This document shows, piece by piece, positions 4,199-61,829 of a stretch of DNA of 64,000 bases. The DNA lies in NCBI RefSeq assembly GCF_006345805.1, contig NC_043004.1:77066001-77130000 (forward strand), given 5' to 3'. Below the pieces are notes generated by a model. That model did not search any database. It saw nothing but the letters and a program-made list of their open reading frames with translations, and was not told the origin of the DNA. The position numbers and the translations under genes were made by a program. The first letter of the stretch is position 1; every line of letters starts with the position of its first letter. The DNA is from Octopus sinensis. Taxonomy: Eukaryota.

Positions 4199-4500
4199 GG
4201 GTGACGAGCTGACAGAATCATTAGCGTGCCGAGAAAAATGCTGAGCGGTATTTCGTCTGCTGCTACGTTCTGACTTCAAATACCGCCGAGATCGACTTTG
4301 CCTTTCATCCTTTCGGGGTCGATTAAATAAGTACCAGTTACACACTGGGGTCGATGTAATCGACTTAATCCCTTTGTCTGTCCTTGTTTGTCCTCTCTGT
4401 GTTTAGCCCCTTGTGGGTAGTAAAGAAACAGGTATTTCATCCACAGTTATGTTCTGAGTTCAAATCCCTCCGAGGTCGACTTTGCCTTTCAACCTTTCGA
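4199..4500 (+). mobile_element. OK-like SINE followed by a partial second internal unit
   Basis: Full head and body, then AAAGAAACA|GGTATTTC restart. Confidence 0.85.
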
Positions 4501-4685
4501 TGTTAATCAAATAATATACACGGTACGATATAGATACATAAAAACACAAAAACATCTCAAAAGGAATACATTAGGGAATTAATAAGAAACGTAAAATCAA
4601 AGGAGTACGCTCTTACCACAAAAGAGGTTGATAAGTGTGTAAGGGGTGGTGGTGGAATGAACGTTAGTAGGAGAATGAGGGACAA

Positions 4686-7170: not shown

Positions 7171-7277
7171 GTATTGGCGCAGAATCATATCCACAATATT
7201 CTTGGCTTAACAAACTTTGGATATGTTGTGTCGTTGATCTCTCTTTTGGTTGCGATTGTGATAATGGTCTTTTGCAG
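7171..7277 (+). CDS. Class B1 GPCR exon, TM1: VLAQNHIHNILGLTNFGYVVSLISLLVAIVIMVFCR
   Basis: GYxxSLxSLxxA TM1 motif; ctatAG / GTGAAA; phase 0-2. Confidence 0.95.
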
Positions 7278-7388
7278 GTGAAAATTTTTCTCATATTTTA
7301 CTTGATGTTTTATAATTCATAAACTGTAATAACATACGCTGTAAATGTTACCTCTTTCGAGGGGTCTCACATCTCATTTTTTGGTTAA

Positions 7389-7845
7389 TGGGGCTACAAG
7401 ATACAATAGCATCAACCCTTAAGGGTTAGCCACATTTAGGTGGCAAATATACTTCACGATGTCGTGCGGCTACTGTTTATACCTAGCTCAGTGATTTATT
7501 ATTGCTTGTTTCCACTTTTTCGAGATAGTGACTTTTCGTCACTGGAAAAAGTATATATATTTGCATTGCGAACCACTTCACATCGCCAGCCGGTTGTTGT
7601 CACATGCTGATGATGGGTCAATACCCAGAAACTCGGGTCCATGTGTATCACGTCAGGCTGGACATGGGAACGATGACTTCCCTTTGCAAATACTGATTGG
7701 CACAGACAGTGTGTCAATAGCCAGCTGGAAGAGATGCCTTCTTGGGGCTACAAGTGACAGTAGCATCAGCTCTTAAGGGTTAGCCACATTTAGGTGGTAA
7801 ATATACTTCACGATCTCGTACGGCTACTGTTTATACCTCGCTCAG
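7389..7845 (+). repeat. 354-bp-period direct repeat (~1.3 units; 7389-7491 matches 7743-7845) containing a hammerhead; retrozyme/pLTR-like
   Basis: Three anchor motifs are each offset by exactly 354 nt. Confidence 0.85.
7601..7645 (+). ncRNA. Minimal type I hammerhead ribozyme with complete canonical core
   Basis: CACAUG-CUGAUGA-UGGG-ucaaua-CCCA-GAAA-C-ucgg-G-UC-CAUGUG: 6-bp stem I, 4-bp stem II, short stem III. Predicted GUC cleavage after 7639. Confidence 0.92.
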
Positions 7846-7850
7846 CGGAA

Positions 7851-7942
7851 GTTACATAGTAACTCAAGGTTTCCTGCGTTAGCACTTATTAAGTGATAAG
7901 TGCCGATTCGCAAAACTCTCGGCCCTTGAGTTACTATGTAAC
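7851..7942. mobile_element. 92-bp MITE
   Basis: Perfect 19-bp TIR GTTACATAGTAACTCAAGG / CCTTGAGTTACTATGTAAC. Confidence 0.75.
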
Positions 7943-7964
7943 ATCTGCCAATTATTAATAATGT

Positions 7965-8492
7965 GTGTCTGAATGTGTATGTGTGTGATGTGTATGTACG
8001 TACGTACGTACGTACGTACGTATGTATGTATGTATGTATGTATGTATGTATGTATGTATGTATGTATGTATGAATGTATGTACGTACGTACGCATGTATG
8101 TATGTATGTATGTATGTGTGTATGTATGTGTGTATGTATGTATGTATGTATGAATGTATGTATGTATGAATGTATGTATGTATGTATATATGTATGTATG
8201 TACGTATGTATGTATGGATGTATGTATGTATGCATGCATGTATGTATGTATGTTTGTATGTAGGTATGTATGTAAGTATGTACGTATGTATGAATGTATG
8301 TATGTATGTATGTAAGTATGTATGTATGTATGTATGAATGTATGTATGTATGTTTGTATGTATGTATGTATGTTTGTATATATGTATATGTATGTATGTA
8401 TGTATGTATGAATGTATGTATGTATATATGTATGTATGTATCTATGTATGTATGTTTGTATGAATGTATGTATGTATGCATGCATGCATGCA
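7965..8492. repeat. Long imperfect (TATG)n microsatellite
   Basis: Seen directly; explains the HTYI/MYVC ORFs. Confidence 0.95.
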
Positions 8493-9714
8493 TTCTTAAA
8501 GCATCCAGTTACAATATCTAATTTTCATTAGATAATGATTTCCCTTGCAGTTGAAAAGTTCATTATTTAATTGCACAGCAGTTATTCATTATTGTAACAA
8601 AACAAATCTGATGTCAAAATAAGACATTATAATGATAAATAAGGTCATATATTCTATACTTAATTTGTCAGTTTAATAAGTCATGACTGAAAGACAGGAA
8701 TTCAATTGACCACATGGCATTTGTTAAGTGCATAATATCATGTTACACACAAGCAACACACTGGGGATTAATGAATCAACTATACACACAGTACTAAAAC
8801 TATGATTTTAGCAGAGTCTAAGGGAATTATATTTAATAGTTGTTACCGAGTAACAATAAGCTATTGTCTCCACCTAGAGTCGAAAATTCTCCTTATGATG
8901 TGATTCATCATTATTTTTAATTAACCTATTCCTTTCTCCATGAATGTTTCATCACATCAGTTTCTGATCGTTAGAATATTTATTCAGTTGTTTCCAATCA
9001 GTTCCTGGCGGAAAATTATAAGCTGAATATAATCTAAATTTATTTCATGTAAAGGCATGGATGGAAGTAAAACCTCTAGCAAGAATGGCGAGTTTTAGAA
9101 ACACCAAGAAACTAAATCATAGAAAGTCTCTCGGCATAATGTTTATTTATGCTATACGCTACTGACTGGGCAGAATCGAGATAAGTCCTGGAAGAGAAAA
9201 TCAGATAACAATAATATAAGAATAACAAATTCTGAAATCCAGAAGACATGCACTGTGCGTTAATAGGGAATATAGCAAAATAAGAGAATTAAGTTACACC
9301 TTTAACATACTGCAATGGAAACAATATCTAGTTAATCTATAAATAGAGACTGGATATTTTTTCCTGTTTGCTTAGTTAACCGAGTTGCATTGATAACCTA
9401 AAGCTCTTTAACATAATGAAACAAATTAATAAAGAATATCAAAAATTACTAGAGATAAACGAAGTGACTGCAATAGTATAACTTTGGAATGTTAAAAAAA
9501 CGTTCATCTTTTGAAATGGATGTTCTACTGATTTCAGCGCTTATCGCTAAGCGATAACAGTTGAAATATCAAATGAACAATTGTAGATTATATCTGATTT
9601 TAACGATTTACAAAGCTCCATTTTATATTAGTTAATACAATTTATGAAAGACCCCACATTACTTTTACTTTATAAAACAAAGGAAAAGATTTTAACATAA
9701 TATTTTAAATTACA

Positions 9715-10076
9715 CTAGCACTATGACCCGGCAACGCCGGGTCATACTGCTAGTGCATGCATATACAGCTGCGTGCGTGCGCACATACACGTGAGTACTG
9801 TCCAAATCTCCGACCAATCACATACAGCTAGCTGGCATTCAATTGGCGTCTCAAGTTTCGGGCATTTTGATTGGGTTTTGGATAGAAAATTCACAAAAAG
9901 TCACTTCTATTGATTTTTTAATGACTTTGCAGGGTGACTGCGGAAATTTAAAGATGTGCATGACCACCCTTCGACGGTTTTGAATTACCATAGAAAGTGC
10001 GAACCTTCTAACTGAAAAATTGTGGATTTGTATAAAGGACACACACACAGACAGACATTTTGCCGTTTATATATAA
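9715..10076 (-). mobile_element. Non-autonomous Helitron-like element
   Basis: Minus-strand 5' end A|TTATATATAAACGG...GTCTGTCTGTGTG resembles the 4686 element; 3' palindrome ends CTAG|T. Confidence 0.6.
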
Positions 10077-10320
10077 TGTGATTCTTATATTGACAGATCA
10101 ACATGCATTTTCAAATCCATATTCGATTTGTGTTACCATGGTCACTTTCAGATTTTCTATGGACGCCAACAGTGCATTCCACGATTAGTAAGGAACAGGT
10201 TGATTTTCTAATACGAAAAATGTATTTTGGGGTTCTGCCTCTAGAATTGCTTAACTCAGAAAAAAAGTTCAATGGCAAGGATGCAGTTTTAGCAAAGCTA
10301 TGAATATACGGCGGTCGTTA

Positions 10321-10484
10321 GGTTCTGAGTTCAAATTCCGTCGAGGTCGACTTTGCTTTTCATCCTTTTGGGGTCGATAAATAAAGTACCAGTTTCGCAC
10401 TGGAGTCGATGTAATCGACTTAATCCCTTTGTCTGTCCTTGTTTGTCCCCTCTATGTTTAGCCCCTTGTGGGCAATAAAGAAAT
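10321..10484 (+). mobile_element. 5'-truncated OK-like SINE
   Basis: GTTCTGAGTTCAAATTCCG...AATAAAGAAATA. Confidence 0.85.
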
Positions 10485-10988
10485 ATATAAATATATGGCG
10501 GTTTAACAATATCATCAGTGTCTACGGAGACAGATTAACTGTAGTGACATTGAGGATTTAACTATATGTTCTCCATTGAGACTTAGTAATATTTCAATAT
10601 TATTATTTTGTTTATAATTTACTACTATTGAAAGGTAGGTGAAATATAGCTGATTGGCTAAGAGTTCGCTTTGCATCCAAACTTGGCATCTTGGGTAAAT
10701 GTCAGTTTCTGTTATATAGCTTCAGGTCAAGCCATATCTAACTAGTTATGTTGGGTAGATAGAAACAATATTGAAGCATAGCGAATGAATTGCATTCAGA
10801 ATGTCAGATCTCTGAAATTCTATCTTAGTTCATATCTGTACCGTAGGTATTAACTTTCAAAAGTACATGAGTAACATTCACATCATAAGTTCTCAGAATC
10901 GTTCGGAGTTTACAGATATTTAATGTATTTCAAAATGTAATCTATATCTATAAAATATTTAATAAATTGCGTTTTTTTCCTTTTCCAG

Positions 10989-11151
10989 GAGATTCCATTA
11001 CAAAAGTAATATTCTTCATATCAATCTATTCCTGGCATTTTCTTGTCGGTCATTGTTTTCCCTTCTCAGACAGAACCTTTTCACTTATGGATTTGCCATG
11101 TCCATTGACTTTCAGAAGAAAGGAGACAAGATAATTTTCAAAGACGGACCG
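10989..11151 (+). CDS. Class B1 GPCR exon, ICL1-TM2-ECL1: RFHYKSNILHINLFLAFSCRSLFSLLRQNLFTYGFAMSIDFQKKGDKIIFKDGP
   Basis: NxxHxNLFxxFxxR motif; ttccAG / GTAAGG; phase 2-0. Confidence 0.95.
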
Positions 11152-11783: not shown

Positions 11784-11821
11784 GTGTGTATGTGTGTATG
11801 TATGTATGTATGTATGTATGT

Positions 11822-12228
11822 ATATCTCTTTTCTCTTTTACTTGTTTCAGTCATTTGACTGCGGCCATGCTGGAGCACCGCTTTTAGTCGAGCAACTCGA
11901 CCCCGGGACTTATTCTTTGTAAGCCCAGTACTTATTCTATCGGTCTCTTTTTTGCCGAACCGCTAAGTGACGGGGACGTAAACACACCAGCATCGGTTGT
12001 CAAGCGATGCTAGGGGGACAAACACAGACATACAACCACACGCATATATATATATACATATATACGACAGGCTTCTTTCAGTTTCCGTCTACCAAATCCA
12101 CTCACAAGGCATTGGTCGGCCCGGGGCTATAGCAGAAGACACTTGCCCAAGATGCCACGCAGTGGGACTGAACCCGGAACCATGTGGTTGGTTAGCAAGC
12201 TACTTACCACACAGCCACTCCTGCGCCT
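11822..12228 (-). mobile_element. Composite core-domain SINE (~400 bp) with internal microsatellite
   Basis: Close copy at 56918-57313; contains the GGGCAAGTGTCTTCTGCTATAGCC core on the minus strand. Confidence 0.8.
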
Positions 12229-12760
12229 ATGTATGTATGTATGTATCATCACTACGAAGCGTAAGGCCTGTAATTTTGGGTGCGGAGTAAGATCTGCGGA
12301 TCTTACGCATGTTGTAAAAAGAATTGAACGAAATGGTCCTATATTATTGTTTTTTAATCATTTTACGTTTCATCCATTGGACTGCGGGTATGATGAGGCA
12401 ATCTTTGAAGAATTATAGTCGAACAAACTCAGCACAGTGCCTGTATTTTTAAGCCTTGTACTTATTCCATCGTTCTCTTTTTGCTTAACCAAGTTACGGG
12501 GACGTATACAAACCAATACTGGTGAGGGACAAACACACGCACACATACACACATACACACACACACACACATATATATATACCGACATCGGTATGTTTAC
12601 GTCCCCGTAACTTAGCGGATCGTCCTAAGACACCGATAGAAAAAATACAAGGCTTTAGAAAAGTAAGTGCTGGGGTCGATTCTCTCGACTAAAATGATTC
12701 AAGGCGGTGTCCCAATATAACTTCAGTTTAATGACAAAAATAAGTAAGCAATATGAGAGG

Positions 12761-13118: not shown

Positions 13119-13496
13119 GAATGGTTGTATACTGTCAATCTAACACGAACGTGACGGCAGTAGGGGGGTACACCACCGCTGTATAGCCCTAGGAAGCATC
13201 GACGCCTCCTGATGGCTTTGACACATTTTTCCCTGTGTCCTTATATACATTTACGAAGGGGAGACAAACACCCCCGGCCGCCAGAGCTGCATCTAGGGAC
13301 ACGTGTTTCAGGATCGTGTCCCTAGATGCAGCTCTGGCGGCCGGGGGTGTTTGTCTCCCCTTCGTAAATGTATATAAGGACACAGGGAAAAATGTGTCAA
13401 AGCCATCAGGAGGCGTCGATGCTTCCTAGGGCTATACAGCGGTGGTGTACCCCACTACTGTCACGTTCATGTTAGATTGACAGTATACAACCATTC
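13119..13496. repeat. 378-bp near-perfect palindrome (arms ~185 bp, 11-nt loop 13304-13314)
   Basis: The arms are reverse complements with a few outer mismatches; the mirrored ORFs 13189- and 13235- confirm this. Confidence 0.97.
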
Positions 13497-24545: not shown

Positions 24546-27417
24546 ACAAAGATATGTACACATACACTACTTTCAGTTTCCATCTGTCAAATCCACTGAC
24601 AAAGCTTTGGTTGCCCCGTGGCTACAATAGAAGACACCTTCCCAAGGTGTCTGGAACTGAAACCGGAACTATGTGGTTGGGAAGCAAACTTCTTGCCACA
24701 CAGCTATACCCGAACCTTATAGAGAAAGAATAAGGAAATATCGATGTAGGTTTTAAAAACACATTTTAATGTAATTTTAATAAAACGACATGATTCTCAT
24801 GGACTTTCGTTAACGCATGGCCGGAGCAATGTGTTCATGACCAGACTACAGTTTATTCGTATGTGCGAACATAAGTGTTCCAATTGCTACTTGACAAACA
24901 TTGCGTGTTCAATGTCAACAACGTCTATTATAGTCTATGTTTCATTCTCTATTTTGTTCTTTCTCTTTTGTTTTGTTTTTTTTTAGTTATTATTCTTCAT
25001 TTTTTTTTCATCATTTAATATTAAATGCGCGTTCTTTTAACAACCGCTTTGCACTATTTCATCTTATAGCTGTCTGCTTTAAATTTTTTTCCGTGAGTTG
25101 GAAAAACATGAAGCGCCTTTGTTTCCTCATAACTTTGAGAAAAATGTATATTTCTTGATGAAATTTTCAGAGTGTGTAGATTACGATTATATGGGAATTT
25201 AAGATGGAAGAAATTGGTGGGCTAGCACATATACATGCTGACACACATCACATATATCTACAAAATGAAACTTGAAATTTCGAAGAAAATTCGTGAAGTG
25301 TGTCAGTATGTATGTGTGCGTACTCATCATTTTCCTTTTCACATCAAATTCCACTATAATTGTAATTTAAACAAAATGAAGAGTATTTGTAGAAAAAGCT
25401 TCCCATTTTCCCGAAAGTTATCAGGAAACAAAACCGATGCGCGTAAATTTTCTGAAACTCCCCTCCAGCAACCGGAAAGTTATTTCATTCCGATATAATC
25501 GGAATCTTCACCGTTTGAAGCGTATTTGTAGAAAATTTCATTTTAAAATACCCATTTTTCTAGAAGTTATGAGGAAACAAAATCGATGGGGTACATTTGT
25601 GTATAGACGCCCATTGCTTTAGCTTAAATAATGCTAAGATTACATTGTTATTATTTATCTTCGTACCGGTTTGCATCACTTCTCTCTCATTTTCTATGTA
25701 AAGATCTTTCATTATATAACTCAATGTTTTATATAAGCAAACAATACACTTCTTTCGTTCTGTATGCATCAAATGGGTGTCTATAATGTGTACGTGATGT
25801 GCTCAGTTTTTCTCAGCACGCAAACGTAGATAGGATGACATACCTACACAATTGTGCCCCACTGACTTTCTTTCTTCACAACTTCCAGAAAAAATGGTTA
25901 TTTTTTAATGAAATTTTCCACAAATATACTTCAGATGGTATAAATTCCGAATTTGCTGTAATAAAGAAAACCCAATTGGGTTTTTTTTTCATATTGAATT
26001 CCAACATAATTAGAATCTTTACACTCTGAAAGATATTTGTTGAAAATTTCTATAACAAATACACATTTTTCTCAGAGTTATGAGGAAACAAAAGCTGACA
26101 TGTGAATTTTCCAAAACACCAACAAACACCCCCACCTCACTCCCACTCACGGAAAAATTTCTTTCACAACAAATTCCAATATAATCAGAATCTACGTCAC
26201 TTGAAGCGTATTTGTTGAAAATTTGCTGAAAAGTCGCAGAGTGGGCACACTTGTATAGATATACCAATAGCATAGTGGTATTCATGATGATAGTGTTTTT
26301 AAAAAGAAATACTAACTGTATTAAACATGCATCGAAGCGTGAATATAAATATATTAAAATTTATTTGCAGCATTTAGGTAGTGATTTTTCATTGCTTTAT
26401 AAATGCACTTTCTTTTAATATAACGGCATTGCATCTTGTAGCTCTTTTTTACGCTTTTCATTATTGACGTTCGAGTTTGCTTCATTGTCGCATGTCTTGC
26501 CTGCATTCTTCCCACACGCATGTCATATGTATACTTATGCATATACACTATTGGAATATATGATACAATAATGTCAAATCAATGTAAAATATGCTATCTT
26601 AAAGATAGCGTGTTCGCACTATTTCCATATATTAATACAACGTTACCAATTATATACCATGAAGAATAATATTTCTGTTGGTGAATTATAAACCTGGAAG
26701 TGCATGTAATTAGAACAGAACAGGATTGAACTCCACAACATCTTACCATGTCAGTTAGCTTCTTTTCTTTTTTTTTTCATGTTTCTGTAACCACTGCACA
26801 ATGATACATAATTTAAAGAAGAAACTCATCTTCTAAATCAATATTACATCACTCCAAAATCATATTAATGTAAGAGAATGGGAATTTTTTTTTTTTTGGG
26901 GGGGGGTCAGGTAGTTGAAATTTGAATGACAATTTTGTGAGTTACGAGGTTGTCGTCTAGATGCTACCAAAAGGATATAGAACTTATATATTGTCCTGTG
27001 TTCCAGGCAAAGGCACAAACCTATTAACAGCTCAGTCAATCTAACGATCTAGTTGTGGCCCATAAATATATTTTGCAGACAGAGTAAACGAGAACTACGT
27101 AACGGACAACTTTTTTGCTTATCTGTAATTGCTAGATAAAATATCCCATAATCAGAAGTGGAATATTCTGGAAATCAATCAAAGCTAAGCTGGGATATAT
27201 TCCAACATATTTCGCTCAGTGCACAGCCCTGTTCTAGATCAAATGTGTCACATTAATAATTATGATGAATAAATATTGAAATGAAATTTAAGCAACAGTC
27301 TTACTCCTATTCCCCGCCCACACACACTCGCACGCACACACACACACACACACACACAAATAAATACAATCAAATAACATTTATCTTATTTATTTACTTA
27401 TTTATTTTTCATAATAG

Positions 27418-37453: not shown

Positions 37454-38554
37454 TGTATGTATGTATGTATGTATGTATGTATGTATGTATGCATGTTTGT
37501 ATACTCATCCGTGTTTTAGCCCAGCATCAATTAATTAATAGAATTATATCCTTTATCCGTTTTCTTTTCCAGATATTTTCTATGGATTCGGAAGTGTCAA
37601 ATTTGAATGCAAACCATGGCCTTGAGTTAAGTTAAGTTAAATAGCATATTTTTCATTATCTCCCTTCGATCGTAAGTATTGATTTACAGCATAAAATATA
37701 AGGATGGGTACACTTGATTAAATCGTTCCTCCTACTTTGCTGGTAAATATTTTATTGACGCCAGAAGGAAGAACGTCTAAGACATTGAAGAAATTGGAAG
37801 AGAATTGCAGAAAGGCTGGGTGCGTTTTGTTACTTGTTCTCTTTATTCTGCTGAATCTATATAAGTATTGTTAAGAGTGCCTGAAGGAATGTGTTCTTTG
37901 ATTTGATATTGTCTCTTAAATACAAACCAGTTTGAACATATATGTACAATTTCCTGCTTTCCAGAATATTCCTCAGTTCGTATAAACTATTTATATAAAT
38001 GTTATCATTTCTCGTCTTATACTGAAATTTCATCAGTATTCAATGATGCTTTTGAAACATTAGCTGCTCATGTGCAGCCTTCAGTAGAACATAATTATTA
38101 ATACAAAGACATGTTTTCCTTTTTTTACGGTTTAAAACAGTGTCTTAGGGCAAAAAATTGCAGATTAAATAAATATAACTTTTTGTATTTATATGCACCT
38201 CCTACCGAGATCGATCTTTCAGGACCAGTCATATATTGATCGACTAAATAGTTCCCCAAGATTTGTTAATAATCGTTATCATGCAGAGGGCTAAGATGAT
38301 GAAAAGCAGATTCGATCAAGTGTCGGACAAAATACCTCAAGTTAATTAGTCTGTTAGTTTAGGTTCTGTATTGGCTTTTCTTTAGTCCTTCACTGATAGA
38401 AAGAAATTTCTATCTGTCAAGTATCGGAGCCAATTGAATTGAGTATTCACTCCGTAATTTTTAGTATTGTCTTAAATGTTAGAAATTGTTATTTTGAGGT
38501 TGACTGGATTGTAAAACAGGAGAGCATCGGACTAACTGCCTCGTGATATTTTAT

Positions 38555-38787
38555 ACCTATTTCTTTACTACCCACAAGGGGCTAAACACAGGGAGGACAA
38601 AAAAGGACAGACAAACGGATTAAGTCGATTATATCGACCCCAGTGCGAACTGGTACTTAATTTATCGATCCCGAAAGGATGAAAGGCAAAGTCGACCTCG
38701 GCGGAATTTGAACTCAGAACGTAGCGACAGACGAAATACTGCTGAGCATTTCGTTCGGCGTGCTAATGTTTCTGCCAGCTCGCCGCC
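38555..38787 (-). mobile_element. OK-like SINE, full length
   Basis: Reverse complement of the 4199 copy. Confidence 0.88.
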
Positions 38788-44000: not shown

Positions 44001-44264
44001 AAATAGTACTTTGCAAAATAAATAGCTGAAATACATATCAAAAAGTTAATCGCAGGTTGTTTTCATACCTCTGGGCTGTGTTGTCTTCTGATATTTGTTT
44101 GATCTTTCGTTCACTGTCTCTAATTCTTATTTACTGTCGCCCAAATTATAGTTGTGGACCTGTTGAAACATGTCATCCCAGATTATTGGTAAAGCGTCCA
44201 CAAGTTTTAGATATGAATTTCAGCTAAATTGTTAGTATGTTGAGTGGTTGTATAAAGTCAACAT

Positions 44265-44435
44265 AACGTGACAGTCCCGTAAAGGGAATTACACCACCGC
44301 TATATAGCCCTAGGAAGCATCGACGCTTCCTGTCGGCTTTGACACATTTCCAGTGTCCTTATATTCGCAAAGGGGAGGCAAGCACCCCCACCAGCTAGGA
44401 CTAGCAACCTGAATATTCTCGTTGAGACATTTAGA
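44265..44435 (+). repeat. Diverged single-arm copy of the 13119 palindrome
   Basis: ACACCACCGCTATATAGCCCTAGGAAGCATCGACGC...GGCTTTGACACATTT. Confidence 0.85.
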
Positions 44436-52920: not shown

Positions 52921-52923
52921 CAC

Positions 52924-53415
52924 GCCGAGGTCGACTTTGCTTTTATCCTTTCGGGGTCGATTAAATAAGTACCAGTTACGCACTGGGGTCGATATAGTCG
53001 ACTTAATCCGTTTGTCTGTCCTTGTTTGTCCTCTCTGTGTTTAGCCCCTTGTGGGTAATAAAGAAATAGGTATTTCGTCTGCCGCTACGTTCTGAGTTCA
53101 AATTCCGCCGAGGTCGATTTTGCCTTTCATCCTTTCGGGATCGATTAAATAAGTACCAGTTACGCACTGGGGTCGATGTAGTCGACTTAATCCGTTTGTC
53201 TGTCCTTGTTTCTCCTCTCTGTGTTTAGCCCCTTGTGGGTAATAAAGAAATAGGTATTTCGTCTGTCTTTACGTTTTGAGTTCAAATTCCGCCGAGGTCG
53301 ACTTTGCCTTTAATCCTTTCGAGGTCGATAAATTAAGTACCAATTGCGTACTGGGGTCGATCTAATCGATTGGCCTCCTCCTCCAAAATCTCGGGCTTTG
53401 TGCCTAGAGTAGAAA
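52924..53415 (+). repeat. Head-to-tail array of OK-like SINE bodies, 184-bp period
   Basis: The junction AAAGAAATA|GGTATTTCGTC occurs at 53069 and 53253. Confidence 0.9.
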
Positions 53416-54551: not shown

Positions 54552-54995
54552 AGATATTTTCGGTTTGAACGGCAGTTTTTCTAGCGGTGTCATATGATAT
54601 TGTCACCCATAATTATAACCCTAGTATCGATCTATTGCATTTCAATCTGTTTAAGGTTAGGGTTAGGGTAGGGGTGTGGGGAAGGGTATCTTTTTTTTCT
54701 TCAGAAATGTAAATAAACCCAATCTGTTTCTTAAACGAGGGACATATTCATACGGCACAGAATGTTTTCACCTCAATAGATGTCATTGATTGGTTGAAAT
54801 TGCAGAAATTGAAGAAAAATAACAGATTGGGTTTATTTACATTTCTGAAGAAAAAATATACCCTCCCCCCACCCCTAACCCTAGCCCTAACCCTAACTCT
54901 AACCCTAACCCTAAAATAGATTGAAATGCAATAGATCGATACTAGGGTCATAATTATGGGTGATAATTTCATATGACACCGCTAGAAAAAACTGC
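54552..54995. mobile_element. Foldback copy of the CCCTAA-containing MITE (arms ~165 bp)
   Basis: 54566-54728 is the reverse complement of 54821-54995. Confidence 0.85.
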
Positions 54996-55371
54996 TGTTG
55001 TGCTGGAAAGAGAGAGAGAGAGAGAGAGGAGAAAGGTTAAAGGAATCGTTTGGGGAAAAGTTAGAAGTGACACCAGTAGAGTTTCGTTTTAATGAATTGC
55101 CGCCGGTAGTGGCATTCGAGGACTTAACGGAGTATTTGGTGTAAATGAGGGTGAGGAAATTTAAGAACTGAATAATTGGTGACTTTGTGTAAATTAAAAA
55201 GAAAAAGGAAAACCAACAGATACAAGACAGAATATTGAACTGTTAGTAAAACGTTATATAAAAACAGTAAAATGAGACTGCCTGTTTATGGGGTGGGCAG
55301 GTAAGTCATTCCATCCTCATTTTTCATTGTATCCATAATTTCATACGATATGTGTTTTTATGTACCCCATT

Positions 55372-56554: not shown

Positions 56555-56917
56555 AATAATTATGAACTTCATTAGCGTACATCTGTTTCTGCTATAAGAT
56601 TAATGCACTCATAGTTGGGTGCTTGAGTACCACCTTATAACTTCATCAGAGCTTCAAACCTGAAGTGCAATTTATTTGGGAAAACTTTTACATTTATGTT
56701 TATACATATCAAAAGCATTACCAATGAAAAAACATACATGTATGTAGGAAATGAAATTCAGGAGATTGAGGAAGAAGCCCTGCCCATAATTAGAATACCA
56801 TAAAGTTTTAAATGTGTACAAGCATAAGTATATGACACATTTCTATAAGATGTGAACACAGTAAAAATAAATATCTCTCAGTAAAATATATATTTCTCCC
56901 TATTTCCTTGTGTATAC

Positions 56918-57313
56918 TCTTTTTACTCTTTTTACTTGTTTCAGTCATTTGACTGCGGCCATGCTGGAGCACCGCCTTTAGTCGGGACTTATTCTTTTTT
57001 GTAAGCCCAGTACTTATTCTATCGGTCTCTTTTTGCCGAATCGCTAAGTGACGGGGACGTAAACACACCAGCATCGGTTGTCAAGCAATGCTAGGGGGAC
57101 AAACACAGACACACAAACACACACACATACACACACACATATATATATATACGACAGTCTTCTTTCAGTTTCCGTCTACCAAATCCACTCACAAGGCATT
57201 AGTCGGCCCGGGGCTATAGCAGAAGACACTTGCCCAAGATGCCACGCAGTGGGACTGAACCCGGAACCATGTGGTTGGTTAGCAAGCTACTTACCACACA
57301 TCCACTCCTGCGC
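56918..57313 (-). mobile_element. Composite core-domain SINE
   Basis: Close match to 11822-12228. Confidence 0.85.
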
Positions 57314-57361
57314 CAGTATATATATATATATATATATAATATATATATATATAATATATAT

Positions 57362-57404
<43 letters not shown>

Positions 57405-57514
57405 TGTAAATTTAAGGAGAATACTTGATAAGTGTAAGCACCTGTATATGCCAGATAGTGGCAGAGGTGAGAGAGAATATATCAAATAAAATTTAAAACA
57501 GAACACAAAGGATA

Positions 57515-57604
57515 TCGCGGTACACGTGTTTCAAGCTTTATAAACAATCCGTCCTTACATCAGTGTATTATTGATATATGGTTTAAAGCTCTCTTCAGCC
57601 GCAA
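57515..57604 (-). ncRNA. Type I hammerhead with intact core and long stem II insertion
   Basis: UUGCGG-CUGAAGA-GAGCUUUA...UAAAGCUU-GAAA-C-ACGU-G-UA-CCGCGA; palindromic ACGU loop typical of PLE hammerheads. Confidence 0.85.
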
Positions 57605-57649
57605 ACATTGTTTTTTATAGTGTGATGTAACTCTTTGGAATAACAATGT

Positions 57650-57744
57650 TTACGACTGAAGAGTGCGTTAAACCATCTTTTATATCAATAATACACTGAT
57701 GTAAGAACGGATTATTTATAAGGCTTGAAACACGTGTACCGCGA
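57650..57744 (+). ncRNA. Decayed twin of the 57515 hammerhead
   Basis: CUGAAGA and GAAACACGUGUA are intact; stems I and II have mismatches. Confidence 0.65.
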
Positions 57745-58003
57745 TATCCTTTGTGTTCTGTTTTTAATTTTATTTGATATATATATATATGAAGTAAACG
57801 GAAAATGGAGAAATCTCCATTTCTTCATTTTCTGTTTACTTTAAATTTGATTCCTGACAAACACTTGTTTATCTTTGTCATTACCTGTAATCTAAAAGCA
57901 TAATATGCTGGCACATGTACTTCCAGGGTTAACATAAGTAACCCAGTAGTATAACGGATACTTTTATCTCTTAGACCATTATTCCAGCCTCTAACTCTAC
58001 TAA

Positions 58004-58682: not shown

Positions 58683-58933
58683 AATAGTGTACATTTAAAC
58701 ACAAAGAGAAATTAACCTATAACAGGCAATTTCTACACGCTAGGAGACAATCACGACGACCGAAAACCACAAAATTTAAGCAATTTCAAAGGGAACATAT
58801 TTTAATTTTAATTTTTTTTTTCATTCCCTTTGAAATTGCTTAAATTTTGTGGTTTTCGGTCGCCGTGACTCTCCTAGCGTGTAGAAATTGCCTGTTATAG
58901 GTAATTTCTCTTTGTGTTTAAATGTACACTATT
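58683..58933. repeat. 251-bp inverted repeat (arms ~110 bp, 28-nt T-rich spacer)
   Basis: 58683-58795 versus 58824-58933, with few mismatches. Confidence 0.93.
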
Positions 58934-59085: not shown

Positions 59086-60510
59086 TGATAAAACGGTAAG
59101 ATAACAAAAGAAAGAAAGAGACCTCAATATTATGTAAATAGAGGAAATTTATCTATACAATATGTTACATTACTCGGTAGTCAAGATAAAACTCTGAGTT
59201 TCAGATGCCGAAGTGGAAATCCACAACACCATCTCTTCGGTTATCTGGCTATTTGAAAACGTTATGAAAAAATACCGTTAAATAAAGGGAAATTACTCTG
59301 TTATAACTCTGCTTGCCTGCGTACTTATACATCGCTCGCATTTTTCGTCATAAAAATTATATAAAAATACATAAAAAATATATAAAAATATAAAAAATAT
59401 ATAAATTCTTCTTGGGACATAACATAGAAAGCACGTTCTATCTGTTTTCTTTAGGGAACCAAAAACGTAACAGAAACTTAGTCACATGTGGGCATGATCC
59501 GAAAAGCTCTGTCCTTGTATTTAGACATGTAGTAGGGTCTAAGCTGCTTTTCCAGATAAGCCATCTCTCCATGTCGCATAGACCGCACCTTCCGCTGCCG
59601 TTAGTATAGGGCTTACATCTGGCCAAAATCTTCCATTGTATGTTATAATCGACACCTTTATCTCTTAAAGACCAAATATGATTAGACAATTGTGTCGCTT
59701 TTCTTTTGTTCCAGTGCCTAAAGCTCAAAGTGTGGTTATTGAACCTGGCCTTGAAATTACCCTCTGTAAGGCCCACGTATTTCTTCGTCGAAACGGTGTC
59801 TTTAGTGGTTATAGAGTTTACGGTAGCTTCATATATGATGGTCTTGGACATGCAAGCTCCATTTAGCGGGCACAATTCTTTATTCCTGCATGAACAGTTG
59901 TTTTCTTCTTGTGTTTTTTGTATGTTATGTTTGATTATGTTACTAAAATTGGTAGTTGAACTAAAACTAATTTTTAAATTGTGTCTATTGAAGAGTTTCC
60001 TATAAGTATGGTTAACTGGAAAATGTCTATCTATCAGTGCTAGGAAATATTTACCTATATTGAAGGCCACCTCGGGTGAGTAAGGGGGCGTAAACCAGAT
60101 GACCTTCCTATTTCTATTATTCCTTTTCTTTACTGTTGGGCTAGTGATAGGTGTATATTTTATTTTATCGCTAAAACCACTATCTTTTAAAGCCTTATTA
60201 TAAACTGGGGCAACGCTATTGAAGATGTCCTCATCAGATGAGAGGCTAGAAATCCTCTTACTAATATTTTTAACTAAATTTTTGAATACTATAGGGGGAT
60301 GGCATGAACCTACATTAATATAACTTAGTCTATCATTGGGCTTCCTATAAGGCTTATAAATATTCTTATTAAGATCTAAGGAAACGTCTAAGAAATTGAC
60401 AACCGTCAAGTTAGTATCTGTAGTTATACTAAGTCCGAAGTGCTTCATTAACTGGATAATATCCTTCCTAAAACGATCTTGTGCTGGTCCATTTGTATTA
60501 GCTGTTAAGG
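59080..60510 (-). mobile_element. Penelope-like element, 5'-truncated; open ORF 60448-59438 (RT thumb, Cys-rich linker, GIY-YIG endonuclease) and 3' pLTR
   Basis: VNFLDVSLDL, HPPIVFKN, CSCRNKELCPLNGAC, IIYEATV...KYVGLTEGNFKARFNNH and CGLC motifs. Confidence 0.92.
59184..59246 (-). ncRNA. Variant hammerhead in the PLE pLTR
   Basis: AGAUAA-CCGAAGA-GAUG...CAUC-u-GAAA-C-ucaga-G-UU-UUAUCU. Confidence 0.65.
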
Positions 60511-61763
60511 TTTACACAATTCGATATTGTTGATTTTTATGCCTCTATCTCTAAAGAACTGCTAGATAAAGCCCTCATCTTCGCTAGTGACTTCATAGAA
60601 ATTAGTACCAATGATAAGGAAATAATCTTCCATGCTAGAAAGACCTTACTTTTCAGTGAGAACGCAAAGTGGGTAAAAAACACCGACACAGAGGGCGCTT
60701 TCGATGTGAGCATGGGTTCATATGATGGGGCAGGCATCTGTGATCTAATTGGACTTTTTCTCCTAGATACCTTAGGTAAGACATTCCCTAACGTACATTT
60801 CGCCATCTACAAAGATGATGCCCTCGCCTTAACAGCTAATACAAATGGACCAGCACAAGATCGTTTTAGGAAGGATATTATCCAGTTAATGAAGCACTTC
60901 GGACTTAGTATAACTATAGATACTAACTTGACGGTTGTCAATTTCTTAGACGTTTCCTTAGATCTTAATAAGAATATTTATAAGCCTTATAGGAAGCCCA
61001 ATGATAGACTAAGTTATATTAATGTAGGTTCATGCCATCCCCCTATAGTATTCAAAAATTTAGTTAAAAATATTAGTAAGAGGATTTCTAGCCTCTCATC
61101 TGATGAGGACATCTTCAATAGCGTTGCCCCAGTTTATAATAAGGCTTTAAAAGATAGTGGCTTTAGCGATAAAATAAAATATACACCTATCACTAGCCCA
61201 ACAGTAAAGAAAAGGAATAATAGAAATAGGAAGGTCATCTGGTTTACTCACCCGAGGTGGCCTTCAATATGGGTAAATATTTCCTAGCACTGATAGATAG
61301 CCCTATACTAACGGCAGCGGAAGGTGCGGTCTATGCGACATGGAGAGATGGCTTATCTGGAAAAGCAGCTTAGACCCTACTACATGTCTAAATACAAGGA
61401 CAGAGCTTTTCGGATCATGCCCACATGTGACTAAGTTTCTGTTACGTTTTTGGTCCCCTAAAGAAAACAGATAGAACATGCTTTCTATGTTATGTCCCAA
61501 GAAGAATTTATATATTTTTTATGTATTTTTATATATTTTTTATGTATTTTTATATAATTTTTATGACGAAAAATGCGAGCGATGTATAAGTACGCAGGCA
61601 AGCAGAGTTATAACAGAGTAATTTCCCTTTATTTAACGGTATTTTTTCATAACGTTTTCAAATAGCCAGATAACCGAAGAGATGGTGTTGTGGATTTCCA
61701 CTTCGGCATCTGAAACTCAGAGTTTTATCTTGACTACCGAGTAATGTAACATATTGTATAGAT
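60511..61763 (+). mobile_element. Inverted second copy of the same PLE (RT core, internal deletions, pLTR)
   Basis: Open frame FDIVDFYASIS...SMGSYDG...IYKDD from 60511; ~10-nt deletion near 61250 and a large deletion near 61300. Confidence 0.92.
61668..61730 (+). ncRNA. Variant hammerhead in the PLE pLTR (identical to the 59184 copy)
   Basis: Same sequence on the opposite strand. Confidence 0.65.
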
Positions 61764-61829
61764 ATATATATATATAGATATATAGATAGAGAGAGAGAGA
61801 GATGAGTAAAAAAGAGGTACATGTGTCCA

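What the first reader, a model, noticed from the sequence alone, without database searches (positions are those of the whole stretch)
7601..7645. Textbook hammerhead ribozyme on the sense strand of a GPCR intron
Seen: every core nucleotide is present (CUGAUGA, GAAA, GUC), with a perfect 6-bp stem I and 4-bp stem II. It is on the GPCR's transcribed strand, 324 nt after the TM1 exon donor site. The stem III segment CUCGGG is self-complementary if G-U pairs are allowed. Known: minimal hammerheads of PLEs and metazoan retrozymes have this short, palindromic stem III and are proposed to cleave as dimers; intronic self-cleaving ribozymes are known in vertebrates (CPEB3 HDV-like, RECK hammerhead). 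Inference: nascent receptor pre-mRNA could be cut at 7639/7640, competing with splicing and tuning receptor output or yielding an ECD+TM1 truncated RNA.
Basis: partly seen in the sequence, partly recalled or inferred. Interest (0 to 1): 0.85.

Follow-up and report, generated by a model that had tools for sequence, protein, structure and literature searches.

The report
Transposon-borne hammerhead ribozyme in receptor intron
The hammerhead ribozyme motif is real, but it sits inside an old, solitary copy of a small retrotransposon of a well-known ribozyme-carrying kind that landed in a receptor gene's intron, so it is most likely an ordinary passenger and not a gene regulator.

Summary
The motif at 7601-7645 (+) is exactly as described: helix I 6 bp, CUGAUGA, helix II 4 bp, GAAA, a 2-bp helix III with a 4-nt loop, and GUC, with predicted cleavage at 7639|7640. 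It lies 324 nt into a 3,711-nt intron (7278-10988) of a secretin-type (class B) GPCR, on the sense strand.

It is not a chance match. A descriptor requiring a self-complementary helix III hit 0 of 2,800 shuffled windows. A covariance model built only from four experimentally tested retrozyme hammerheads (coral, mussel, two axolotl) puts this site first in the window (23.4 bits; next 14.1). Rfam's hammerhead models do not report it.

The motif sits in a 459-bp, GC-richer, highly structured insert (7389-7847). The insert is 1.3 copies of a 354-nt unit, and the ribozyme is in the unduplicated middle, so there is one ribozyme and no partner in cis. Unit size, GC content and ribozyme architecture match animal non-LTR retrozymes, especially the mussel ones. 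The window also holds a Penelope-like element with its own hammerhead variant, and a further minimal hammerhead.

Best reading: a retrotransposon passenger, at most a slow cleaver. Regulation of the receptor is unsupported but not excluded. No other copies and no orthologous introns could be retrieved.

The parts
7601..7645 (+). Type I hammerhead ribozyme motif. Helix I 7601-7606/7640-7645; core CUGAUGA 7607-7613; helix II 7614-7617/7624-7627 with loop 7618-7623; GAAA 7628-7631; helix III 7631-7632/7637-7638 with loop UCGG 7633-7636; C17 at 7639. Predicted cleavage between 7639 and 7640.
   Evidence: Read directly. Own descriptor. Covariance model R1 built from validated retrozyme hammerheads: 23.4 bits, E about 2e-4, full length, best hit in the window.
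7586..7664 (+). Long imperfect hairpin that extends helix I into the flanks (GCCAGCC...GGCUGG, UGU/ACG, GU/AU, with bulges). The hammerhead sits at its tip.
   Evidence: RNAfold with 10-80 nt flanks gives the same extension each time. It is also present in the fold of the whole insert.
7389..7493 (+). Direct repeat R, the first copy of the duplicated part of the 354-nt unit.
   Evidence: the repeat finder D2 (91% identity, spacing 354), blastn, alignment.
7494..7742 (+). Unduplicated middle of the unit. It contains the only hammerhead.
   Evidence: No second copy of the ribozyme anywhere in the window, with up to 3 mismatches.
7743..7847 (+). Direct repeat R', the second copy. It has about 9-10 mismatches to R, several at CpG sites.
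7389..7847 (+). Whole insert: 1.29 copies of a 354-nt unit. GC is 45%, against 36% for the window and about 30% for the flanks. It is strongly structured.
   Evidence: GC profile. Unit GC and circular fold -103 kcal/mol, z -2.4. Insert fold z -3.2 (+ strand) and -4.7 (- strand).
7171..7277 (+). TM1 exon of a class B (secretin-type) GPCR, immediately upstream of the host intron.
   Evidence: Translation, splice sites, Pfam HRM and 7tm_2 on the joined exons.
7278..10988 (+). Host intron (3,711 nt, phase 2). The cleavage site lies 3,349 nt upstream of the acceptor.
   Evidence: Donor at 7278. Acceptor ttttccag|G at 10988/10989 with in-frame ICL1/TM2 sequence.

Best explanation
The motif is a genuine type I hammerhead. 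It belongs to a roughly 354-nt non-coding retroelement of the animal 'non-LTR retrozyme' kind, that is, a non-autonomous element mobilised by Penelope-like elements (PLEs).

In the life cycle of such elements (established for coral, mussel and axolotl; inferred here), tandem transcripts are cut by the hammerheads, often acting as dimers through an extended helix III. The unit-length RNA is circularised by a tRNA ligase. It is then copied by a PLE reverse transcriptase and integrated as partial tandems.

At this locus a 1.3-unit copy was inserted, long ago, in sense orientation into the TM1-TM2 intron of a class B GPCR. Only one ribozyme is present, so it cannot release a unit-length RNA and has no partner in cis for the dimeric form. 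It may still cut a fraction of the nascent pre-mRNA slowly at 7639|7640. I put the chance of detectable self-cleavage in vitro at about 50%. That would be a by-product, with little or no effect on receptor mRNA output.

Shown here: the motif, its significance, the partial-tandem insert, the composition and structure of the insert, the sense intronic position, and the presence of PLE-type elements with hammerheads in the same window. Inferred: family membership, the mobilisation route, low activity, and absence of a host function.
For: 1. Architecture. Helix I of 6 bp, helix II of 4 bp and helix III of 1-2 bp with a small palindromic loop is the published description of canonical metazoan type I hammerheads (PMC4209133).

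2. Validated relatives. The tested mussel retrozyme hammerhead (GCGUCA/CUGAUGA/GUCU-UUUGU-AGAC/GAAA/CGCGCG/UC) has the same layout, including a 6-nt palindrome between A15.1 and U16.1. It sits in 350-390-bp repeats.

3. Independent model. R1, built only from the coral, mussel and two axolotl hammerheads, ranks 7601-7645 first in the window, at 23.4 bits against 14.1 for the next hit.

4. Insert anatomy. It is 1.29 copies of a 354-nt unit, with GC 45% against 36% and z-scores of -2.4 to -4.7. Retrozymes are described as 170-400-nt units with GC below 45-50% that are highly self-paired. PLE-type integration typically gives partial tandems (PMC8557442).

5. PLE machinery in the same window. ORFs at 59438-60448 (-) and 60706-61287 (+) belong to a family of about 700-aa proteins (397 homologues). 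An AlphaFold model of a homologue (pLDDT 88.8) has telomerase RT as its best structural match, followed by other reverse transcriptases. The family carries invariant GIY...YIG...R...H...E...N residues.
 - The two copies lie head to head next to (TA)n. Each carries a hammerhead with one core change (CCGAAGA) about 190 nt after the stop codon.
 - Homologous elements in other organisms carry hammerheads 67-125 nt after the stop codon.

6. Another minimal hammerhead, with the helix III palindrome CACGUG, lies at 57515-57604 (-).

7. Intronic copies are commonplace. About 44% of Xenopus retrozyme copies overlap introns, and monomers are dispersed (bioRxiv 10.64898/2026.07.22.740005).
Against: - No other copy of the 354-nt unit is in the window, and none could be retrieved elsewhere. 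That it is a repeated family is therefore inferred and not shown.
- No target-site duplication was found.
- There is no sequence similarity to the PLE-like element in the window.
- Rfam's hammerhead models do not score the motif.
- The hammerhead is fully intact although the two repeat arms differ by about 9%. This is compatible with luck (about 0.11-0.16) but also with constraint.
- The mussel hammerhead of the same design cleaves at about 0.1 per min as a single repeat, so appreciable cleavage of the pre-mRNA cannot be dismissed.
Confidence: 0.72

Rival explanations
1. Exapted regulatory ribozyme. The hammerhead cuts the nascent receptor pre-mRNA at 7639|7640 in competition with splicing, and this has been selected to tune receptor output, as proposed for the CPEB3 and RECK intronic ribozymes.
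For: - Sense strand, intact core and intact helices.
- The cleavage site is 3.3 kb upstream of the next exon. With a mussel-like rate of about 0.1 per min, a fraction of transcripts would be cut before the acceptor is made.
- There is a precedent: inhibiting the CPEB3 intronic ribozyme raises its host protein (PMC10919898).
- Retrozyme-like hammerheads were domesticated in amniote introns (PMC6155905).
Against: - The transposon context and solitary copy.
- Weak helix III, and no partner in cis for the dimeric form.
- No conservation data.
- Slow hammerhead cleavage inside an intron did not impair splicing in vivo (Dye 2006 and Fong 2009, via PMC2995048).
- The 5' fragment would end in a cyclic phosphate without a poly(A) tail, so a stable 'ECD+TM1' mRNA is unlikely (established RNA biology, my inference).
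Confidence: 0.06
2. Active retrozyme locus. The insert is transcribed and processed into a unit-length circular RNA that can transpose.
For: Unit size, GC content, strong folding and a type I hammerhead all match retrozymes.
Against: Release of a unit-length RNA needs two cleavage sites. This locus has one hammerhead, because the duplicated 105 nt do not include it. The roughly 9% divergence between the arms suggests an old copy.
Confidence: 0.03
3. Chance motif in ordinary intron sequence that happened to undergo a local partial tandem duplication. No transposon and no ribozyme biology are involved.
For: No other copies, no target-site duplication and no Rfam hit. At genome scale a strict descriptor without the helix III rule would give hundreds of chance hits (0.010 per 64 kb).
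Against: With the palindromic helix III rule there were 0 hits in 2,800 shuffles, against 2 observed in this window. The independent model R1 picks the site. There is a GC and structure island exactly over the insert. PLE-type hammerheads lie nearby.
Confidence: 0.03

Closest known systems
Non-LTR retrozymes of animals, especially the Mytilus galloprovincialis retrozyme (Mg353) (Cervera and de la Pena 2020, PMC7229834)
   Same: A type I hammerhead with helix I of 6 bp, helix II of 4 bp and a 6-nt (near-)palindrome between A15.1 and U16.1. The unit is about 350 nt (354 here; 350-390 in mussel). GC is low, the RNA is highly self-paired, the host is a mollusc-type genome, and PLEs co-occur.
   Different: Here there are only 1.3 units and a single ribozyme, not an array. 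The 10.1-11.1 pair is U-A and not G-C. The helix III dimer would contain two G.U pairs. There is no sequence similarity outside the ribozyme core. Copy number and circular RNA are unknown.
Amphibian satellite 2 / axolotl retrozyme hammerheads (Ax353, Ax330), which cleave as dimers (Forster et al. 1988; PMC7229834)
   Same: A very short helix III with a palindromic loop. The 10.1-11.1 position is not G-C (Ax353 has U.U). Units are 330-353 nt. Activity as a monomer is weak.
   Different: The amphibian copies sit in long tandem arrays, so a partner for the dimer is always present. Here there is none within 64 kb.
Minimal hammerheads in pseudo-LTRs of Penelope-like elements (Cervera and de la Pena 2014, PMC4209133)
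   Same: A short palindromic helix III, partial-tandem insertion architecture, and co-occurrence with RT/GIY-YIG elements in the same region.
   Different: The motif at 7601 is not adjacent to any RT ORF (the nearest is 51 kb away). It has a canonical 6/4-bp helix I/II layout, not the reduced PLE form.
Sm-alpha SINE-like element of Schistosoma mansoni, with an active type I hammerhead
   Same: A small (about 330 nt) non-coding retroelement carrying a type I hammerhead, found both dispersed and in tandem (own knowledge; mentioned in PMC6155905).
   Different: The Schistosoma ribozyme has a longer helix III and defined loop-loop contacts, and it is fast as a monomer.
Conserved intronic ribozymes of vertebrates (RECK/CTCL/DTNB hammerheads; CPEB3 HDV-like)
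   Same: A self-cleaving motif on the sense strand of an intron. The vertebrate intronic hammerheads are thought to derive from retroelement hammerheads.
   Different: Those are defined by deep conservation at orthologous positions and, for CPEB3, by a measured effect on the host gene. Neither is shown here, and Rfam's HH9/HH10 models do not match.

Membership tests
Hammerhead ribozyme (type I) | Conserved catalytic core: C3 U4 G5 A6 N7 G8 A9, G12 A13 A14, A15.1-U16.1, H17 | tested here: met
   All are present with no deviation, and C17 is the cleavage nucleotide.
Hammerhead ribozyme (type I) | Three helices around the core, with helix I open-ended and helices II and III capped | tested here: met
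   Helix I 6 bp, helix II 4 (5) bp, helix III 2 bp with a 4-nt loop. Helix III is minimal.
Hammerhead ribozyme (type I) | Recognised by the curated Rfam hammerhead covariance models | tested here: not met
   No hammerhead family was reported at gathering score, or at E<=10 on 701 nt or 78 nt.
Hammerhead ribozyme (type I) | Recognised by a model built from experimentally validated animal retrozyme hammerheads | tested here: met
   R1 (four sequences from the PMC7229834 supplement) gives 7601-7645 at 23.4 bits, E about 2e-4, full length, top hit among 128 kb searched.
Hammerhead ribozyme (type I) | Mg2+-dependent self-cleavage 3' of H17, giving 2',3'-cyclic-phosphate and 5'-OH ends | not testable with these tools
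   This needs in vitro transcription. Nearest-neighbour folding is uninformative: the validated mussel ribozyme also has an MFE (-13.1) well below its hammerhead fold (-5.7), like ours (-13.7 against -6.2).
Animal non-LTR retrozyme | Tandem repeats of a 170-400-nt unit, each with a type I hammerhead | tested here: inconclusive
   The unit is 354 nt, but only 1.29 copies and one hammerhead are present. Dispersed monomers are described for such families.
Animal non-LTR retrozyme | Low GC (below 45-50%) and a highly self-paired unit RNA | tested here: met
   GC 44.9%. Circular MFE -103 kcal/mol, z -2.4. Insert z -3.2 and -4.7.
Animal non-LTR retrozyme | Multi-copy family in the genome | tested here: inconclusive
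   No second copy in the 64-kb window. The source genome is not searchable here. Metagenome, viral and protein-space searches found no relative of the unit.
Animal non-LTR retrozyme | Expression as linear and circular unit-length RNA | not testable with these tools
   No transcriptome is available.
Animal non-LTR retrozyme | Co-occurrence with autonomous Penelope-like elements | tested here: met
   RT/GIY-YIG-type ORFs lie at 59147-61767, with a hammerhead variant in the 3' region.
PLE pseudo-LTR hammerhead | Located in the terminal repeat of an element that encodes RT plus a GIY-YIG endonuclease | tested here: not met
   No RT ORF lies next to 7389-7847, and there is no similarity to the PLE-like copies at 59-62 kb.
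Domesticated intronic ribozyme (RECK-type hammerhead, CPEB3-type) | Sense strand of an intron of a protein-coding gene | tested here: met
   Intron 7278-10988 of a class B GPCR, + strand.
Domesticated intronic ribozyme (RECK-type hammerhead, CPEB3-type) | Conservation at the orthologous position across species | not testable with these tools
   A protein search with the GPCR exons found no orthologue from which to fetch loci.

The most novel reading that the evidence does not exclude
A retrozyme-derived hammerhead has been co-opted in a mollusc (reportedly an octopus) to cut the nascent pre-mRNA of a secretin-type neuropeptide receptor just after the TM1 exon, setting receptor levels by kinetic competition with splicing. 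This would be an invertebrate counterpart of the CPEB3 and RECK intronic ribozymes.
Probability: 0.05. Interest if true: 0.6.

Novelty: new member of a known kind. Interest (0 to 1): 0.2.

Why it matters
As it stands, this is one more dispersed copy of a known class, the type I hammerheads of animal retrozymes and PLEs. Such motifs number thousands per genome in many invertebrates and often lie in introns.

It is useful mainly as annotation. It shows that this genome carries retrozyme-like units and hammerhead-bearing Penelope-like elements. It also shows that Rfam's hammerhead models miss motifs with a minimal helix III, such as this one.

It would matter more only if comparative or RNA-end data showed conservation or a measurable effect on the receptor transcript. 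That would extend domesticated intronic ribozymes beyond vertebrates.

Tried and rejected
- **Rfam.** Gathering threshold on the whole window, then E<=10 on 701-nt and 78-nt slices: no hammerhead family. The same held for the second motif.
- **Orthologous loci.** A protein search with the joined GPCR exons found nothing.
- **Other copies of the element.**
  - A search with the 93-aa open frame across the insert found nothing.
  - A viral-contig scan found nothing.
  - A metagenome scan for CTGATGAN{12,16}GAAACTCGGGTC gave 21 hits, of which 20 have no helices (chance).
  - The remaining hit (L002 6925-6971) is a real hammerhead with the same helix III but different helices I and II. It lies on a eukaryotic contig with no other similarity.
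- **Exact look-up of the window's 336-aa ORF:** not on record.
- **Target-site duplication:** none of 7 nt or more.
- **tRNA-derived SINE head:** none.
- **An argument I dropped.** The 45-mer's MFE is not the hammerhead fold, because CUGA pairs with the UCGG loop (-13.7 against -6.2 kcal/mol). The validated mussel, coral and axolotl ribozymes show the same gap, so this says nothing about activity.
- **The U-A pair at 10.1-11.1 as evidence against membership:** weakened, because validated Ax353 and the PLE-associated hammerheads in L023 and L025 have U.U there.
- **Second-best R1 hit (13286-13332, -):** rejected as a hammerhead. It is the tip of a 378-bp foldback and lacks GAUG of the core.
- **Pfam and PDB sequence searches of the PLE-like protein family:** no hits. 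Only the structure prediction plus Foldseek identified the RT fold. The GIY-YIG domain rests on conserved motifs alone.

Full report
**1. Observation**

The 45 nt at 7601-7645 (+) read CACAUG-CUGAUGA-UGGG-UCAAUA-CCCA-GAAA-C-UCGG-G-UC|CAUGUG.
- Every invariant hammerhead position is present.
- Helix I is six Watson-Crick pairs and helix II four (five if U-A closes a 4-nt loop).
- Helix III is only A15.1-U16.1 plus C-G around a UCGG loop.
- The segment ACUCGGGU can pair with itself, with two G.U pairs (-8.9 kcal/mol).
- Cleavage would fall between 7639 and 7640.

**2. Host gene**

Exons of a secretin-type (class B) GPCR lie on the + strand.
- Two hormone-receptor-domain exons lie near 2.6 and 3.5 kb.
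- The TM1 exon is 7171-7277.
- A TM2 exon starts at 10989.
- A TM3 exon lies near 13.8-14.0 kb.
- Joined, they hit Pfam HRM (9e-17) and 7tm_2 (1e-9).

The motif is therefore 324 nt into a 3,711-nt phase-2 intron (7278-10988), on the transcribed strand. It is 3,349 nt upstream of the acceptor.

**3. Is it more than chance?**

I wrote a descriptor requiring CUGANGA, GAAA, UH and paired helices I and II.
- With relaxed stems it finds 0.15 sites per dinucleotide-shuffled window.
- With stems as good as here it finds 0.010.
- Requiring also a self-complementary 4-8-nt segment between A15.1 and U16.1 gives none in 2,800 shuffles.
- The real window has two such sites.

Rfam's hammerhead models report nothing, even at E<=10 on a 78-nt slice.

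I therefore built an independent model from four experimentally tested retrozyme hammerheads given in the supplement of PMC7229834: coral Amil224, mussel Mg353, and axolotl Ax353 and Ax330.
- Run without filters over both strands of the window, it puts 7601-7645 first: 23.4 bits, E about 2e-4, full length.
- The next hit scores 14.1 bits and is the tip of an unrelated foldback.

So the motif is a member of the animal type I hammerhead class by core, by topology and by a model of validated members. It is not a member by Rfam's curated models.

**4. What surrounds it**

The motif lies in a 459-bp insert (7389-7847).
- The insert consists of a 105-nt segment, a 249-nt middle that holds the ribozyme, and the 105-nt segment again. 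That is 1.29 copies of a 354-nt unit.
- The two arms differ at 9-10 positions.
- The insert is a GC island: 45% against 36% for the window and about 30% for the flanks.
- It folds far better than shuffles (z -3.2 and -4.7 for the two strands; -2.4 for the circularised unit).
- Helix I continues into a long imperfect hairpin (7586-7664).
- There is no tRNA-like head, no target-site duplication and no other copy in the window.

**5. Comparison with known elements**

- Canonical metazoan type I hammerheads are described as helix I 6 bp, helix II 4 bp, and helix III 1-2 bp capped by a small palindromic loop. They are inefficient alone and active as dimers when a second copy is nearby (PMC4209133).
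- Animal non-LTR retrozymes are tandem units of 170-400 nt with GC below 45-50%. They are expressed as highly paired linear and circular RNAs.
- The mussel units are 350-390 bp. Their hammerhead has a 6-nt palindrome (CGCGCG) in exactly the position of CUCGGG here.
- PLE-type integration typically produces partial tandems and head-to-head inverted copies, with a bias for microsatellites (PMC8557442).
- A 2026 preprint derives animal retrozymes from PLE terminal repeats. It finds about 44% of Xenopus copies in introns, with monomers dispersed along chromosomes.

The insert fits this picture in size, composition, structure, ribozyme design and partial-tandem form.

**6. PLE-type elements in the same window**

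Two nearly identical 5'-truncated ORF-bearing copies lie head to head at 59147-61767, beside (TA)n tracts.
- Their product has 397 homologues, typically about 700 aa on contigs of about 2.5 kb.
- Pfam and PDB sequence searches are blank.
- An AlphaFold model of a homologue (pLDDT 88.8) has Tribolium telomerase RT as its best structural match, followed by other reverse transcriptases.
- Each window copy has a hammerhead with one core change (CCGAAGA) about 190 nt after the stop codon, at 59184-59246 (-) and 61668-61730 (+).
- Homologous elements from other organisms carry hammerheads 67-125 nt after the stop codon, in one case followed by (TA)n.

A further intact minimal hammerhead, with the helix III palindrome CACGUG (the same as axolotl Ax353), lies at 57515-57604 (-). 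It sits in a head-to-head pair (57477-57782) between (TA)n tracts.

None of these shares sequence with the 354-nt unit, so no specific autonomous partner is identified.

**7. How it most likely works**

The ribozyme's role belongs to the element, not to the host gene. It processes multimeric transcripts into unit-length RNA for circularisation and reverse transcription. This is established for coral, mussel and axolotl, and inferred here.

This locus has one ribozyme, so it cannot release a unit, and there is no partner in cis for the dimeric form.

Whether it cuts the pre-mRNA is open.
- Axolotl-type monomers are weak, but the mussel ribozyme of the same design reaches about 0.1 per min as a single repeat.
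- Folding energies do not discriminate: validated ribozymes show the same gap between MFE and hammerhead fold.
- Even with cleavage, published work shows efficient splicing when an intron is cut by a slow hammerhead. Only a fast ribozyme aborts splicing (summarised in PMC2995048).
- With 3.3 kb to the acceptor and a half-life of minutes, only a minority of transcripts would be cut before exon definition (my inference).
- The 5' fragment would lack a poly(A) tail.

**8. Selection**

If the two arms were identical at insertion, each has changed by about 4.5-5%. The chance that 45 nt stayed untouched is then about 0.11-0.16. Intactness is thus no evidence of constraint, especially since the site was picked because it is intact.

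**9. Verdict**

- The structural interpretation is right.
- The regulatory inference is unsupported, but it cannot be excluded without the genome, related species or RNA data.
- It is a new member of a known kind.

**10. Limits**

No second copy of the unit and no orthologous intron could be retrieved. The claim that the unit is a repeated family is therefore an inference from its anatomy.

Noticed in passing
window 57515-57604 (-), within 57477-57782: A second intact minimal hammerhead: UUGCGG/CUGAAGA/8-bp helix II with a loop of about 40 nt/GAAA/CACGUG/UA|CCGCGA. Its helix III palindrome is identical to that of axolotl Ax353. It lies in a head-to-head inverted pair (102-nt arms, 96% complementary) between (TA)n tracts. 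The mirror copy on the + strand has a degenerate helix I.
   Followed up: partly
window 59147-61767 (ORFs 59438-60448 - and 60706-61287 +): Two 98-99% identical, 5'-truncated copies of a Penelope-like element, joined head to head and flanked by (TA)n. One has a 413-nt internal deletion. The protein family (about 700 aa) gets no hit in the local Pfam copy (a precomputed weak HTH_animal hit is on record for one homologue). A predicted structure matches telomerase RT best, and the C-terminus has a GIY-YIG-like motif.
   Followed up: partly
window 59184-59246 (-) and 61668-61730 (+): A hammerhead-like motif in the 3' region of each PLE-like copy, with a single core deviation (C instead of U4: CCGAAGA). 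Helix I is 6 bp, and the helix III segment is the 7-nt near-palindrome CUCAGAG.
   Followed up: partly
window 13119-13496: A 378-bp near-perfect foldback (146-nt arms, 99% complementary, 11 nt apart) in the next intron. Its tip mimics part of a hammerhead (GAAACACGUGUC) but lacks the CUGAUGA box. Related arms lie at 44236-44389. Other foldbacks lie at 25867-26092, 54568-54999 and 58683-58933.
   Followed up: partly
window 7848-7948 and 7991-8490: Directly after the insert there is a 104-nt palindromic segment (25-nt arms, 92% complementary). It is followed by a 500-bp (TGTA)n/(TACG)n microsatellite in the same intron. Whether either belongs to the insertion event (PLE 'tail', microsatellite targeting) is unknown.
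   Followed up: no
window 10989-11100: The GPCR's first intracellular loop reads RFHYKSNILHINLF. From memory, class B receptors usually have a K-L-H-C-T-R-N-x-I-H motif here (not checked), so this receptor would be divergent at a normally conserved site.
   Followed up: no
window 4205-4514, 10314-10496, 38546-38782, 52923-53369; also 11819-12246 / 56911-57335: Several short interspersed repeat families, with 89-94% identical copies in both orientations. The window is dense with repeats, yet the 354-nt hammerhead unit has no second copy.
   Followed up: no
L002 6925-6971 (-) (metagenome contig Ga0126336_10004877): A solitary type I hammerhead with the same helix III (CUCGGG) but different, compensating helices I and II (GAGCAA/UUGCUU; GGUUC/GAACC). 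It lies on a eukaryotic contig that also carries gypsy-type RT fragments. There is no other similarity to the window.
   Followed up: partly
L022 (ENA contig k141_605641, 2577 bp): A contig encoding a full 728-aa homologue of the PLE-like protein has identical 141-nt ends. The assembly is therefore circular or tandem, with a unit of about 2.4 kb. My descriptor finds no canonical hammerhead there (R1 gives only a weak 12-bit hit).
   Followed up: no
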